A stretch of DNA of 44,831 nt from Octopus bimaculoides (Eukaryota), in the NCBI RefSeq assembly GCF_001194135.2, contig NC_068993.1, forward strand, positions 6,363,574-6,408,404, read 5' to 3'. The notes below the pieces were generated by a model. The model was not told the origin of the DNA and ran no database searches. It saw only the letters and a list, made by a program, of their open reading frames with translations. The stretch's first letter is position 1, and each line of letters starts with the position of its first letter. Positions 5,731-43,530 of the stretch are shown here, in pieces. Both the position numbers and the translations under genes were made by a program.

Positions 5731-5853
5731 CCTGATGAAGGCTGGAGGGCATATCAGCAGAAAGGTTGTGTTCACAACAAACAAGATGAGGGCAAATATC
5801 CGTCAAATGTAAATAATGTATAAGATAGATATGTTAAAAAAAGAACTAAGGGA
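5731..5853 (+). mobile_element. SINE family C 3' fragment, unit 1 (starts at hammerhead core)
   Basis: cctgatgaaggctggagggcatatcagcagaaaggttgtgttcacaacaaacaagatgagg... is homologous to the 3' part of 29499-29730 (-). Confidence 0.85.
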
Positions 5854-5982
5854 CCTGATAAAGGTGGAGGGTATATCAGCCGAAAGGTTGTGTTAACAAC
5901 AAACAAGATGAGGACAAATATCTGCCAAATGTAAATAATGTAAACAATGTATAAAATAGATATGTTAAAAAAAGAATTAAGG
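5854..5982 (+). mobile_element. SINE family C 3' fragment, unit 2 (tandem, period 123 nt)
   Basis: cctgataaaggtggagggtatatcagccgaaaggttgtgttaacaacaaacaagatgaggac...; shares the downstream atagatatgttaaaaaaagaa with unit 1. Confidence 0.85.
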
Positions 5983-6755
5983 CAATAATTGGAGATGAAA
6001 GAAAAATAAAGTTCACAGATGCATCTGTCAATCCTTACTACCCCTTTTATGCCCCTATACTTTTTTCCCATATTAACCATTCCATCACTCTCAAGTGATT
6101 GGTACCATTCAATTTGAGATGCAGTTATTCATCCCTGTTCAACACTGAAAATATTGCATGATCACAGCTGAAATAACTTTCATCATAGATTTGCTCCATC
6201 AAGTTTGAATGGAGTTAAATAACAAAACTGGAAAAAGAAAAGGATTCTCTTTGAACCATTACTGTACTCTAGACCGTGTGTTGAGTTTGTTTGTACAGAT
6301 GCGAGTGTGTTTGTATGTATGTATGTATGTATTCACATCCAATAAAGTTAACATGTCTCTGCGTGTATGCGCGTTATATATTATATAAATAATATATTAT
6401 ATATGTACGTGTGCTTGTGGGCGTATATAGTGTGCACGGGTGTTTTATACATTTCCTACACACACACTTATGTATGTATGTGTGAATACATACCTAAGTA
6501 TATATTAAGTATATGTATGCATGCATACTCATATATATATATATATATANNNNNNNNNNNNNNNNNNNNNNNNNNNNNNNNNNNNNNNNNNNNNNNNNNN
6601 NNNNNNNNNNNNNNNNNNNNNNNNNNNNNNNNNNNNNNNNNNNNNNNNNNNNNNNNNNNNNNNNNNNNNNNNNNNNNNNNNNNNNNNNNNNNNNNNNNNN
6701 NNNNNNNNNNNNNNNNNNNNNNNNNNNNNNNNNNNNNNNNNNNNNNNNNNNNNNN

Positions 6756-29498: not shown

Positions 29499-29730
29499 TA
29501 TTTACATTATTTATATTTGACGGGTATTTGTCCTCATCGTGTTTGTTGTTAGCACAACGTTTCGGCTGATATACCCTCCAGCCTTCATCAGGTGTCTTGG
29601 GGAAATTTCGAACCTGGGTTCTCATTCCTAAGGTATTTTTCGATGTTATTATTATTCAGGTCACTGCCTGGAATCGAACTCGGTATCTTGGGGTTAGTAG
29701 CCCGAGCTCTTAACCATTACGTCATATGCC
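29499..29730 (-). mobile_element. SINE family C, full-length: tRNA-like head, body and hammerhead-containing PLE-like tail
   Basis: Reverse complement GGCATATGACGTAATGGTTAAG (A box)...CCGAGTTCGATTCC (B box)...(AAT)n...GACACCTGATGAAGGCTG...CAGCCGAAACGTTGTGC...tail; possible 6-nt TSD tgtatt at 29493-29498 and 29731-29736 (low complexity). Confidence 0.9.
29551..29597 (-). ncRNA. Minimal type I hammerhead ribozyme motif
   Basis: Stem I GACAC/GUGCU (GUGUU in other copies); core CUGAUGA at 29591-29585; extra A; stem II GGCUG/CAGCC; GAAA at 29563-29560; palindromic (A)ACGU(U) stem III; GUU cleavage triplet with predicted cut between 29556 and 29555. Confidence 0.75.
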
Positions 29731-34823: not shown

Positions 34824-34855
<32 letters not shown>

Positions 34856-34861
34856 GAAAAG

Positions 34862-35485
34862 TCGGCGAGCTGGCAGAATCGTTAGCGCGCCGGGCAAAAT
34901 GCTTAGCGATATTTCATCCGTCGTTACGATCTGAGTTCAAATTTCGCCGAGGTCGACTTTACCTTTCATCCTTTCGGGGTCGATAAATTAAGTACTGATT
35001 GAACACTGCGGTTGATGTAATCGACTCATCCCCCTCCTCCAAGTTGCTGCCCTCGTGGCAAAATTTGAAATCATTATTATTATTATTATTATTATTAATT
35101 AAGGCTGCGAGTTGGCAGAATCGTTAGCACTCTGGGCAAAATGCTAAGCGGTATTTCGCCCGTCGCTACGTTCTGAGTTCAAATTCCGCCGAGGTCGACT
35201 TTACCTTTCATCCTTTCGGGGTCGATAGATTAAGTAGCAGTTGAGTACTGAGGATCACTCTGATTGACTCATCCCATTTCCCAAAATGGCTACCTTTGTG
35301 GTAAACTTTGAAATTGTTATTATTATTATTATCTTTACATTCTGAGTTCACATTCCGCTGAGCTAAACTTTGCCTTCCATCCTTTCGAGGTCGATAAAGC
35401 AAGTAGGAACGTAGTGAGGGTGATGTAACTAACCTAATTTACCCCCGAAAATTGATGGCATTATTCCAAAATTATAAAGAATTAC
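34862..35485 (+). mobile_element. Head-to-tail array of three SINE family B copies separated by (ATT)n
   Basis: Copies at 34862-35070, 35102-35315 and 35332-35485 (5'-truncated); (ATT)n at 34824-34855, 35071-35097 and 35316-35331. Confidence 0.9.
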
Positions 35486-41412: not shown

Positions 41413-41684
41413 AAGCCAGTTAACAGCAGCAATCGTTTGCACGTCGGACAAAATGTTTAGCAGTATTTTTTTCTGGTTCTTTATACTAGTTCAAACGCCA
41501 CTGAGGGCGATTTAGCTTTCCATCCTTTTGGGGTCAATAAAATAAAATACCAATTGAGTAATGAGGGCGGTGTAAATAATTAATTTCTCCCCACCCCCTA
41601 AAATTACTGACCTTGTGGCAAAATTTGAAGCCATTAAGCTGGTTTGCTGGCAGAATCGTTAGCACGCCGGACAAAATGCTTCGC
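41413..41684 (+). mobile_element. SINE family B copy followed by a second family B head interrupted at 41684
   Basis: tagctttccatccttttggggtcaataaa...ccttgtggcaaaatttgaa, then gctggcagaatcgttagcacgccggacaaaatgc. Confidence 0.75.
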
Positions 41685-41842
41685 TATTTTTCGATGTTGT
41701 TGTTATTATTATTCAAATCACTGCCTGGAATCGAACTCGGGCATGTGGCGTAGTGGTTAAGAGTGAGGGCTACTAACCCCAAGATTCCGAGTTCGATTCC
41801 AGGCAGTGACTTGAATAATAATAATAATAACATCGAAAAATA
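41685..41842. repeat. 56-bp inverted repeat (arms 41685-41740 and 41787-41842)
   Basis: The left arm is the reverse complement of the B-box/(AAT)n segment of the adjacent SINE C; 53/56 identical by manual alignment. Confidence 0.95.
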
Positions 41843-41927
41843 CCTTATGAATGAGGTATTCGAAATATCCCCCAAGACACCTTATGAAGGCTGGAGGGTA
41901 TATCAGCCAAAACGTTGTGTTAACAAC
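41740..41927 (+). mobile_element. SINE family C with mutated hammerhead core and short 3' end
   Basis: ggcatgtggcgtagtggttaag (A box), ccgagttcgattcc (B box), gacacCTTATGAaggctggagggtatatcagccAAAAcgttgtgttaacaac. Confidence 0.9.
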
Positions 41928-43530
41928 ACCACAACAATAACAACGTAATTGATCAGAAAATCATAATTGATTTATAATTTAGACCCAGGGGCCAGCTATT
42001 TTAGGAGAGTAGGGGTTAATCGATACCAGCGATACCAATTCCTTGCTGGAACTTAATTTTATCGACTTTGAAAGGGAAAAAAAAGCAAATNNNNNNNNNN
42101 NNNNNNNNNNNNNNNNNNNNNNNNNNNNNNNNNNNNNNNNNNNNNNNNNNNNNNNNNNNNNNNNNNNNNNNNNNNNNNNNNNNNNNNNNNNNNNNNNNNN
42201 NNNNNNNNNNNNNNNNNNNNNNNNNNNNNNNNNNNNNNNNNNNNNNNNNNNNNNNNNNNNNNNNNNNNNNNNNNNNNNNNNNNNNNNNNNNNNNNNNNNN
42301 NNNNNNNNNNNNNNNNNNNNNNNNNNNNNNNNNNNNNNNNNNNNNNNNNNNNNNNNNNNNNNNNNNNNNNNNNNNNNNNNNNNNNNNNNNNNNNNNNNNN
42401 NNNNNNNNNNNNNNNNNNNNNNNNNNNNNNNNNNNNNNNNNNNNNNNNNNNNNNNNNNNNNNNNNNNNNNNNNNNNNNNNNNNNNNNNNNNNNNNNNNNN
42501 NNNNNNNNNNNNNNNNNNNNNNNNNNNNNNNNNNNNNNNNNNNNNNNNNNNNNNNNNNNNNNNNNNNNNNNNNGTACGTGTGTGTATATGTGTACGTGTG
42601 TGTATATGTGTGTGTGTATATATATGTGTGTGTGTGTATGCGTGTTTGTGCATATTCTTGTGTGTGTGTGTACATTTGTATATGCGTGCATACATATATA
42701 TGCTTATGTGTGCATACATAATATGTATGCTAATATGTAGGTGTGCGTGCGTATATATGATTATGAGCGTGCGTTTGCACATGCATGTGCGTGCATGTAT
42801 ATTTGTATGCTAGTGTGTGTGTGTGTGTGTGTTTGAATGTGCATATTTGCTTGTGTGTGTGTGTGTGTGTGTGATTGTGTGTGCACGCAAATATCGTGCT
42901 GTGTTTGCGTTACCGAGCTTCAGTTTCGTAGCAGCTCTTTACTTTTGTGTTCTCCAATTTATCAAAGTGACGGACGCGACTGGTGTGAAGTCACCTGATC
43001 AAAGGAGGTTCCGTTGTCGAGGTGCACCAAAACTGACAGCTCCTTTCATCATTCTTTAAAGTGCAGCCATTGATGTTCAAAGCTCCTTCTGAATGCACCA
43101 ACAATTTCAGAAATTATTTGACAGAGGATACTTACAAACGTATTTCTCTCCACCCTGTCTTTCTCGTATTTGTGAGTGTGTGTGTGTCTGTCTGTCTGTA
43201 TGTATGTATGCATGTATGTGTGTGTGTATGTAGCAATCGCATTGCTATCATACACAACGATTAATGTACCAACAAATCGATTGTTAAATAACCTCGGATT
43301 TACATTTTGTATAGATTTCCCGATGTATTTAACCTATACAGTATCTTATATTACTCGCTTGATATTCGAATATCCAGGTTCACACGCTGCACACGTTCCT
43401 TCCAAGCACTGCTGTAAACAGCAGACGTGAGCTAGAACGTTGAAACTTTGTGCGCATGCACAACAGAGTTCCAGGTCAATCTGTGCCAACCGGCTTTACT
43501 CTGCGTGCTTTAGCATTGCTACTATGGCAA

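What the first reader, a model, noticed from the sequence alone, without database searches (positions are those of the whole stretch)
41685..41842. Fold-back inverted duplication fused to the intact 5' end of a SINE C copy
Seen: 56 nt (41685-41740) directly abutting the first G of the SINE are the reverse complement of internal nucleotides 41787-41842 (53/56 identical), giving a long hairpin with a 46-nt loop that holds the A box. The insertion truncates a family B SINE head. L1 twin priming inverts without duplicating in front of an intact 5' end, whereas cDNA snap-back and self-copying gives this geometry, and 5' inverted partial repeats are a known PLE feature. Inference: independent mechanistic support for PLE-driven mobilisation. 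It is also a potential cruciform or dsRNA/ADAR substrate.
Basis: partly seen in the sequence, partly recalled or inferred. Interest (0 to 1): 0.75.

Follow-up and report, generated by a model that had tools for sequence, protein, structure and literature searches.

The report
Inverted partial copy capping a SINE
A 56-base stretch of a short mobile element sits upside-down directly in front of that element's own start; it is real, many other copies of this ribozyme-carrying family show the same thing, and it is a known by-product of how such elements are copied into DNA, so it is a useful example and not a new kind of thing.

Summary
Arms 41685-41740 and 41787-41842 match 53/56, with a 46-nt loop holding the A box. 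It is the only inverted repeat in the window that is not low-complexity sequence. Single-copy contigs from three independent individuals span the junction exactly, so it is not an assembly artefact. Eight other individuals' contig sets lack it.

The left arm is the reverse complement of SINE C positions 48-103. It is cut short at both ends and has no target-site duplication. It joins a truncated B SINE head through about 8 nt of microhomology, and joins the SINE start through 1-3 nt.

Raw reads show the geometry recurs across the family. Position 1 of SINE C abuts an inverted SINE C segment starting at position 1, 2, 8, 12, 28, 29, 35, 41, 51, 95 or about 131, at 3% or more of 5' ends. SINE B shows no such joint among its 15 best-supported joints.

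SINE C carries a minimal hammerhead ribozyme of the Penelope-like element (PLE) type, an AC-rich 3' end and an optional tail.

The best reading is one insertion-coupled inversion at the 5' junction, by cDNA snap-back or second-strand priming. Snap-back also occurs with the LINE R2, so the geometry alone does not prove PLE mobilisation. The ADAR idea found no support. Verdict: a new member of a known kind, of moderate interest.

The parts
41426..41632 (+). Older, diverged full-length B-type SINE that immediately precedes the truncated B head, making a B-B tandem. Context only.
   Evidence: BLAST against the window: 41426-41636 matches 34873-35076 at 71%. Sequence read.
41633..41692 (+). B SINE head, complete at its 5' end and truncated after about B position 57-60. 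Its last 8 nt or so (41685-41692, TATTTTTC; B consensus GGTATTTCG) are shared with the left arm, so this junction is a microhomology junction. The rest of this B copy is not found downstream.
   Evidence: Alignment to three other B heads runs to about 41692. BLAST ends at 41691-41693. An 58-nt single-copy contig in X8 spans 41655-41712.
41685..41740 (-). Left arm: reverse complement of SINE C positions 48-103. It covers the B-box region and the (AAT)n(AAC)n stretch, up to CATCGAAAAATA. It is truncated at both ends relative to a SINE C copy.
   Evidence: It shares the minority T at the position equivalent to 41811 with the right arm (T in about 8-12% of the family). It has one private C>T and two AAT/AAC differences.
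41741..41786 (+). Hairpin loop: SINE C positions 2-47, including the A-box-like TGGCGTAGTGG at 41746-41756.
41740..41936 (+). Sense SINE C copy. It comprises a tRNA-like module, (AAT)5AAC at 41813-41830, a degenerate hammerhead and an AC-rich end. It lacks the roughly 45-nt tail that most copies carry after ...TAACAAC.
   Evidence: Family read depth stops at about 41936, and reads from other copies continue AACAAGATGAGGACAAATATCCGTCAAATG after 41928.
41787..41842 (+). Right arm: SINE C positions 48-103 inside the sense copy. It includes the B-box-like GTTCGATTCC at 41791-41800.
41878..41919 (+). Minimal hammerhead motif of the PLE type, inactivated in this copy: cac-CTtATGA-A-GGCTG(10 nt)CAGCC-aAAACGT-T|gtg. 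Position G5 is T (41883) and G12 is A (41909). The family consensus has G at both.
   Evidence: Consensus letters from reads: 41883 T>G about 95%, 41909 A>G about 86%. The intact version is at 29559-29591 on the minus strand. Hallmarks as listed in PMC4209133.

Best explanation
The fold-back is a scar of one complex retrotransposition event.

A SINE C RNA was copied into DNA by target-primed reverse transcription at a break inside an older B SINE. SINE C is a non-autonomous element with a tRNA-like head, a PLE-type minimal hammerhead and an AC-rich 3' end. The first cDNA reached the start of the tRNA-like module.

Before the 5' junction was sealed, a second stretch of DNA was made in the opposite orientation, covering SINE positions 48-103. 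Two routes give this:
(a) The 3' end of the cDNA folded back on itself and copied 48 to 103 (snap-back).
(b) The cut top strand of the target (...TATTTCG-3') annealed to the RNA at CGAAAAAUA (positions 95-103) and primed a second cDNA that stopped at 48.

The ends were joined through short microhomologies: about 8 nt on the B side and 1-3 nt at the SINE start. The rest of the B copy was lost and no target-site duplication was made.

Shown here: the structure, both junctions, the microhomologies, the absence of a duplication, and the recurrence of the same geometry in the family.
Inferred: that one event made it, and which polymerase and template made the arm.

The hairpin has no demonstrated function. 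It is a by-product, possibly an unstable one.
For: Structure and junctions. Both junctions are spanned by single-copy contigs from independent individuals.

Family-level recurrence:
- With reads laid on sense SINE C only, 12 of the 15 best-supported joints are 'opposite strands'. Nine of these have SINE position 1 on one side and position 1, 2, 8, 12, 28, 29, 35, 41 or 51 on the other.
- These rest on 48 (X23) and 58 (X24) raw reads against a depth of about 1,700-1,800 at position 1, and on single-copy contigs. The shorter side reaches 66-71 nt.
- More such joints appear at k=95, where the laid stretch runs 40 nt past position 1 so the stretch boundary cannot explain it, and at k of about 131.
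- No same-strand joint with position 1 is among those listed, so the process is orientation-specific.
- The k values do not cluster in the (AAT)n tract, where an ATT-preferring nuclease would place nested insertions.
- SINE B, with 8 times more reads laid, has no inverted joint among its top 15.

The arms share a minority variant (T at 41811, about 8-12% of the family).

Published precedent:
- PLE insertions often carry an inverted 5'-truncated copy at the 5' end (PMC8557442).
- A PLE protein cleaves and extends both strands and starts in an AC-rich stem-loop downstream of the hammerhead, leaving an optional tail (PMC11167929).
- Snap-back 5' junctions occur after full-length cDNA in R2-driven insertion (PMC11371274).
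Against: - The arms differ at 3 of 56 positions, more than expected if one arm was copied from the other recently, particularly if the structure is a young segregating allele.
- The arm does not include the element's 3' end, as a typical PLE inverted copy would.
- No target-site duplication and no empty site were found, so 'one event' is parsimony, not proof.
- Eight other individuals' contig sets lack the junction. The alternative allele could not be reconstructed.
- X1 holds a contig in which the arm runs on to the antisense copy's own 5' end before the sense copy begins. This leaves room for a longer original palindrome.
- The SINE B control is qualitative only, because 70 further joints were not displayed.
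Confidence: 0.55

Rival explanations
1. Secondary rearrangement at the DNA level. The locus first held a longer head-to-head pair of SINE C copies (inverted copy reaching its own 5' end), or an ordinary copy. A later event produced today's 56-nt arm: either an asymmetric deletion at the centre of an unstable palindrome, or a double-strand break repaired by fold-back synthesis and microhomology-mediated end joining.
For: The junction is in 3 individuals' contig sets and missing from 8 others, as expected for a recent structural change. X1 has a single-copy-depth contig (26) reading arm ...CTCGG + AATTCTGGGGTTAACCACTACGCCATAAGCCCGCGT + GCATGTGG..., which is the arm continued to the antisense 5' end. 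X1 and X6 carry the B/arm junction behind a different B head. The junctions have microhomologies of about 8 nt and 1-3 nt.
Against: A deletion ending within 1 nt of the sense copy's first base would be a coincidence. Genome-wide, one side of the inverted joints is nearly always exactly position 1, not scattered as central deletions would be. The X1 contigs cannot be shown to be alleles of this locus: the head variant GAGTGAGGG occurs in about 5-13 copies. Contig sets cannot prove absence.
Confidence: 0.22
2. Two independent insertions. An older antisense SINE C copy was hit at its position 48 by a new sense copy, and separate deletions removed the older copy's positions 1-47 and 104 to the end.
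For: The three arm mismatches (5%) and the different (AAT)n/(AAC)n composition fit two source copies. The left arm's microsatellite variant is itself very abundant in the genome (31-mer depth about 84,000). SINE C is high-copy, so nesting does occur.
Against: It needs three events and two exact coincidences. There is no target-site duplication, and no remainder of the old copy lies after the sense copy. The arm's left end is a microhomology junction with B, not a SINE 3' end. Only inverted joints with position 1, and no same-orientation ones, appear among the best supported. The arms share a minority variant.
Confidence: 0.15
3. Assembly artefact of a gappy short-read scaffold, in which two SINE C fragments were wrongly joined.
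For: The window has 17 N gaps, one of them 150 nt downstream at 42091-42573. Three runs of a 2015 sample lack the junction. PLE-type tandem and inverted structures are known to disturb short-read assemblies (PMC8557442).
Against: Identical 65-nt junction contigs at single-copy depth occur in X7 and X8, with index words also in X55. These come from a different study and different individuals. The B/arm junction is also spanned.
Confidence: 0.03

Closest known systems
Inverted 5'-truncated copy at the 5' end of Penelope-like element insertions (Evgen'ev & Arkhipova 2005; Craig et al. 2021, PMC8557442)
   Same: A partial copy of the same element lies in opposite orientation, immediately adjacent to the 5' end of the main copy. 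It recurs across the family. The element carries a PLE-type minimal hammerhead, an AC-rich 3' region and an optional tail. Partial head-to-tail tandems also exist (5731-5985).
   Different: Here the element is a roughly 200-nt tRNA-like SINE, not an RT/EN-encoding PLE. The focal arm is only 56 nt and lacks the element's 3' end. No autonomous partner was found in the window.
cDNA snap-back 5' junctions in R2-protein-mediated insertion (Zhang et al. 2024, PMC11371274), attributed there partly to polymerase theta-like snap-back synthesis
   Same: Antisense insert sequence lies between the upstream target DNA and the RNA-templated 5' end, also after full-length cDNA. The upstream target is joined to antisense sequence.
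   Different: That system is a LINE (R2) in human cells. Here the arms differ at 3 of 56 positions, and the identity of the template cannot be shown.
L1 twin priming (Ostertag & Kazazian 2001)
   Same: An inversion at the 5' side of a retrotransposed copy. There is microhomology between the target's top strand and an internal site of the RNA (about 8 nt here).
   Different: Twin priming gives an inverted 5' segment plus a 5'-truncated direct segment, with at most a small overlap, flanked by a target-site duplication. Here the direct copy is complete, the inverted segment is nested within it (a 56-nt duplication), and there is no target-site duplication.
Hammerhead-bearing SINE-like and retrozyme elements of invertebrates, such as Schistosoma Sm-alpha and non-LTR retrozymes (PMC4209133, PMC7229834; Sm-alpha from my own knowledge)
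   Same: A short non-autonomous element that carries a type I/minimal hammerhead and is thought to depend on PLE machinery.
   Different: Retrozymes are tandem arrays thought to move through circular RNA. SINE C is mostly dispersed, has a tRNA-like head with A and B boxes, and at least one copy has a 12-nt target-site duplication.

Membership tests
PLE-type insertion architecture | Partial copy of the same element, in inverted orientation, immediately adjacent to the 5' end of the main copy | tested here: met
   Arm 41685-41740 is the reverse complement of positions 48-103 and abuts position 1 with a 1-3 nt overlap.
PLE-type insertion architecture | The inverted copy is 5'-truncated but keeps the element's 3' end (RT start region) | tested here: not met
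   The arm stops at position 103 and joins a B SINE through about 8 nt of microhomology. Positions 104 to the 3' end are absent.
PLE-type insertion architecture | The feature recurs in the family and is not found in an unrelated SINE family | tested here: met
   Nine position-1 inverted joints are among the top 15 for SINE C, with further ones. SINE B has none in its top 15. The control is qualitative: 70 joints were not shown.
PLE-type insertion architecture | Partial tandems (pseudo-LTR) and an optional 30-40 nt tail | tested here: inconclusive
   A tandem pair of 5'-truncated hammerhead + AC-rich + tail units lies at 5731-5852 and 5854-5985. Three different 3' ends are seen: focal about 41936, copy 29730 about 45 nt longer, the units at 5731 about 80 nt longer. 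RT start sites were not mapped.
PLE-type insertion architecture | An autonomous PLE (RT + GIY-YIG EN) sharing the 3' module | not testable with these tools
   No open frame of 90 aa or more with coding character is in the window. The host genome is not searchable here.
PLE minimal hammerhead (Cervera & de la Pena 2014) | [quoted passage not shown] | tested here: met
   Copy 29559-29591 (minus strand) reads CAC-CUGAUGA-A-GGCUG(10 nt)CAGCC-GAAACGU-U|GUG. Reads give G at 41883 and 41909 as the consensus. Criteria are quoted. Rfam models do not detect it, as expected for a motif without helix III.
PLE minimal hammerhead (Cervera & de la Pena 2014) | Self-cleavage | tested here: inconclusive
   There is no pile-up of RNA-seq read ends at the predicted site. 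Ordinary poly(A)/cDNA libraries are not suited to show it. The focal copy has two core mutations.
L1-type twin priming | Inverted 5' part plus 5'-truncated direct 3' part, together no more than one element, with a small overlap or gap and flanked by a target-site duplication | tested here: not met
   The direct copy starts at position 1. The inverted part is nested within it (48-103). No duplication of 7 nt or more was found.
cDNA snap-back 5' junction | Antisense insert sequence lies between the upstream target and the RNA-templated 5' end, and the arm is copied from the same cDNA | tested here: inconclusive
   The geometry is met. Copying from the same molecule predicts identical arms, but 3 of 56 positions differ, while the arms share a minority variant.
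tRNA-derived SINE | Internal A and B boxes, a discrete 5' end, target-site duplications, and a 3' part shared with an autonomous partner | tested here: inconclusive
   A- and B-box-like motifs are present. There is a 12-nt duplication at the 29730 copy. No tRNA fold is recognised. 35-50% of heads have a conserved upstream extension. The partner is unknown.

The most novel reading that the evidence does not exclude
SINE C may be a tRNA-headed, hammerhead-bearing non-autonomous partner of a Penelope-like element. Its thousands of copies would then preserve a natural record of PLE integration intermediates. At several per cent of insertions a second, oppositely oriented DNA synthesis occurs at the 5' junction. 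The distribution of its start and end points, together with arm identity, could tell apart dual-strand priming by a dimeric PLE enzyme and cDNA snap-back in vivo. The focal hairpin would be one segregating example, still polymorphic in the population.
Probability: 0.35. Interest if true: 0.6.

Novelty: new member of a known kind. Interest (0 to 1): 0.4.

Why it matters
Little of the Penelope-like element integration mechanism has been worked out. One in-vitro study shows that both DNA strands are cut and extended (PMC11167929). The inverted and tandem structures seen in genomes are still unexplained.

A short, very abundant non-autonomous element that leaves the same inverted 5' structures offers many small junctions that can be read in full. 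These could be used to test models of dual priming against snap-back. They could also show that a tRNA-like SINE can depend on a PLE and not on a LINE.

The single locus matters little in itself. It is a clean, read-supported and apparently polymorphic example, and a possible site of hairpin instability.

Tried and rejected
- ARAGORN and Rfam (gathering and E<=10 thresholds) find no tRNA and no hammerhead in the window or in the 29730 copy. The hammerhead was read by hand against published criteria.
- A search for target-site duplications at four candidate left boundaries found only chance 6-mers.
- Cross-species empty site: the unique right flank is held only by organism A runs, so no orthologue could be examined.
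- ADAR/dsRNA idea: three RNA runs show SINE C reads on both strands and 11-13 A>G places against 10 in DNA. There is no excess. Editing specific to this locus could not be separated from family variation.
- RNA 5' ends or hammerhead-cleaved ends: no pile-up was found.
- I suspected that the conserved upstream 'long-form' extension is an inverted copy of the element's far 3' tail. The alignment was not significant: 11 of 500 shuffles scored as well, and better chance hits exist elsewhere in the window. Rejected.
- Reconstructing the alternative allele in non-carriers from contig fragments gave inconsistent pictures. Left unresolved.
- A six-frame scan for a PLE ORF next to the hammerhead tandem at 5.7 kb, and across the whole window, found nothing.
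- A literature search for the SINE sequences themselves gave no hits. The organism names are coded, so I do not name the species.
- The other long inverted repeats in the window are TA/TG/ATT microsatellites.

Full report
OBSERVATION

Arms 41685-41740 and 41787-41842 are 56 nt long, 53/56 complementary and 46 nt apart. The mismatches are at right-arm 41810, 41825 and 41828, all transitions.

The loop (41741-41786) holds the A-box-like TGGCGTAGTGG. The B-box-like GTTCGATTCC lies inside the right arm.

As single-stranded DNA the region folds into one hairpin of -57.2 kcal/mol, z = -14.7. It is the only inverted repeat of 28 nt or more within 800 nt in the window that is not low-complexity sequence. 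All others are TA/TG/ATT microsatellites.

ANATOMY

A second SINE C copy lies at about 29510-29730 on the minus strand. It is flanked by ATACAAGAACAA and starts within 4 nt of the same GGCAT. Aligned to it, the focal sense copy runs from 41740 to about 41936, and the left arm is the reverse complement of SINE positions 48-103.

To the left of the arm is a B SINE head (41633-41692). It aligns to three other B heads up to about 41692. About 8 nt (TATTTTTC; B consensus GGTATTTCG) therefore belong to both B and the arm.

At the other end the arm overlaps the first G of the SINE. It overlaps 3 nt (CGG) of the common long form of the head.

The rest of the B copy is not downstream. What follows the SINE is unique sequence and then an antisense B fragment. 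No target-site duplication of 7 nt or more exists for any candidate boundary.

The arm is thus an internal fragment cut at both ends. It is not a normal 5'-truncated antisense insertion, which would keep its 3' end.

IS IT REAL DNA?

The window is a gappy scaffold with 17 N runs, so I laid public data on it.

A 65-nt contig covering 41711-41775 is the span expected for a junction-specific 31-mer path. It is present with no differences and at single-copy depth in X7 (40.9, against 35.1 for the unique flank) and in X8 (31.0, against 29.2). X8 also has a 58-nt contig, 41655-41712, across the B/arm junction. The index finds the junction words in X7, X8 and X55 only. It finds them at 0.00 in seven other listed runs of the same organism (six samples), including three runs of a 2015 sample.

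No spanning contig was seen in X1, X2, X3, X4, X5, X6 or X9, which come from five samples.

The junction is therefore genuine. It looks like a segregating structural allele. Contig sets drop variants, however, and cannot prove absence.

I could not reconstruct the other allele. X1 and X6 carry the B/arm junction behind a different B head. X1 has a contig in which the arm runs on to the antisense copy's own 5' end before the sense copy starts. The head variant occurs in about 5-13 copies, so these may be paralogues.

THE FAMILY

Reads of two individuals (X23, X24) and contigs of two others were laid on sense SINE C only (41740-41860). Of the 15 best-supported joints, 12 are 'opposite strands'. 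Nine of these join SINE position 1 directly, without letters in between, to an inverted SINE C segment starting at position 1, 2, 8, 12, 28, 29, 35, 41 or 51.

These nine joints rest on 48 and 58 raw reads from many start points, against a depth of about 1,700-1,800 at position 1. That is at least 3% of 5' ends. They also rest on single-copy contigs. The shorter side reaches 66-71 nt, so these are real inverted duplications.

With the 29730 copy and 40 nt of unique flank, a joint between position 1 and position 95 appears exactly at 29730. The position-1 joints are therefore not a boundary effect. A further class joins position 1 to about position 131, with 20 or more reads in X24.

No same-orientation joint with position 1 is listed. 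The start points do not cluster in the (AAT)n tract, where an ATT-preferring nuclease would place nested insertions.

The same test on a B head laid 8 times more reads and gave no inverted joint among the top 15. This control is qualitative, because 70 joints were not displayed and the ranking favours contig-supported joints.

WHAT SINE C IS

The family consensus and the 29730 copy carry CAC-CUGAUGA-A-GGCUG(10 nt)CAGCC-GAAACGU-U|GUG. This meets every hallmark listed for the minimal hammerheads of metazoan PLEs (PMC4209133):
- a G10.1-C11.1 pair;
- palindromic positions 15.2-16.2 with no helix III;
- a short helix I.

In the focal copy G5 and G12 are mutated. Reads give G at both positions in about 95% and about 86% of copies.

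Directly after the motif comes an AC-rich stretch. The focal copy ends there. Most copies continue for about 45 nt, and two 5'-truncated units in head-to-tail tandem at 5731-5985 continue for about 80 nt.

This matches the published picture for a PLE: RT initiation in an AC-rich stem-loop downstream of the hammerhead, an optional tail, partial tandems and frequent 5' truncation (PMC11167929; PMC8557442). Read depth over the hammerhead module is 4-6 times that over the head.

No PLE ORF is in the window, so the partner remains inferred.

About 35-50% of heads carry a conserved upstream extension, AAGCCTTAAAATTCACTCCATAATTGCCCACG. Its nature is unknown. The 'intact 5' end' is therefore the start of the tRNA-like module, the short form.

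MECHANISM

Classical twin priming does not fit. The direct copy is complete, the inverted piece is nested inside it, and there is no target-site duplication.

Two routes give the observed product.
(a) Snap-back. The completed cDNA folds back, primes at position 47/48 and copies to 103. Its new 3' end (...CGAAAAATA) anneals to TATTTCG in the B SINE.
(b) Second-strand priming. The cut top strand ending in ...TATTTCG anneals to the RNA at CGAAAAAUA and primes a second cDNA that stops at 48. The two cDNA ends are then joined.

Route (b) is what a PLE protein that cleaves and extends both strands would do. It explains both the microhomology and the three arm differences, because two RNA molecules would be involved. 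Route (a) has direct experimental precedent, but with the LINE R2 (PMC11371274).

The geometry alone therefore does not discriminate PLE from LINE. The PLE link rests on the hammerhead, the AC-rich end, the tail, the tandems and the family-wide inverted joints.

I put 0.55 on a single insertion-coupled event. I put 0.22 on a later DNA-level rearrangement (palindrome-centre deletion or fold-back repair), 0.15 on two independent insertions plus deletions, and 0.03 on artefact.

SIDE CLAIM

The hairpin is a potential cruciform or dsRNA. Three RNA-seq runs show SINE C reads on both strands. They show no discrete ends at position 1 or at the ribozyme site. A>G places are no more numerous than in DNA: 11-13 against 10. 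Editing of this one locus could not be tested.

VERDICT

The fold-back is an instance of a known class: an inverted partial copy at the 5' junction of a retrotransposed element, typical of PLEs and also seen as snap-back with R2. It occurs here in a tRNA-like, hammerhead-bearing SINE family in which it recurs at several per cent of 5' ends.

It is a new member of a known kind. The locus itself is of moderate interest. The family would be a good natural data set for studying the PLE integration mechanism.

Noticed in passing
window 5731-5852 and 5854-5985 (+): Two head-to-tail units, each consisting only of the SINE C 3' module: a hammerhead (both slightly mutated), the AC-rich stretch and a long tail (...AAGATGAGGACAAATATCCGTCAAATGTAAATAATGTA...GATATGTTAAAAAAAGAA(C/T)TAAGG). 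They look like a PLE-style partial tandem (pseudo-LTR) of 5'-truncated copies. No ORF lies beside them.
   Followed up: partly
window 29510-29730 (-): A second SINE C copy with an intact minimal hammerhead (29559-29591), the roughly 45-nt tail and a 12-nt target-site duplication, ATACAAGAACAA. Four nucleotides (TACA) lie between the upstream repeat and GGCAT.
   Followed up: yes
reads laid at 41738/41740 and 29730; not present in the window: About 35-50% of SINE C heads in the genome are preceded by a conserved extension, AAGCCTTAAAATTCACTCCATAATTGCCCACG. A 'long form' therefore exists, and the tRNA-like start is not the 5' end of every family member. Its origin is unknown. The idea that it is an inverted tail was tested and rejected.
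   Followed up: partly
reads laid at 41807-41815 and 29619-29630; not present in the window: A very abundant sister family shares the tRNA-like head (to about position 71) and the hammerhead module. In place of the (AAT)n region it has a perfect roughly 30-nt palindrome, CTAGGTTCGTCCATCGATCGATGGACGAACCTAG. This is another inverted duplication fixed inside an element of this group.
   Followed up: no
window 41711-41775 (junction), runs X7, X8, X55 against X1-X6, X9-X11, X13: The junction-specific contig is present in three individuals of one 2025 study. It was not found in eight other individuals at similar depth, including the 2015 sample. It is either a segregating structural allele or contig drop-out. 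The alternative arrangement could not be reconstructed.
   Followed up: partly
window 34840-35480 (+) and 41426-41692 (+): B SINE copies sit in head-to-tail arrays separated by (ATT)n tracts: 34862-35070, 35100-35315, then a 5'-truncated copy. The truncated B head at 41633 also directly follows another B copy. The B family seems to insert repeatedly into its own (ATT)n tails.
   Followed up: no
window 41897, 41913, 41765, 41788 (family-level reads): Several CpG-type transitions are 2-4 times more frequent in RNA reads than in DNA reads of SINE C (for example 41913 C>T, 36-45% against 11%). This suggests that the transcribed copies are a biased, older or methylation-decayed subset. It is not an A-to-I editing signature.
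   Followed up: no
window 29538/29643, 29588/29656, 29605/29680: Single-copy contigs in two individuals show inverted joints between two internal SINE C positions, not involving position 1. Not all inverted structures of the family are anchored at the 5' end.
   Followed up: no
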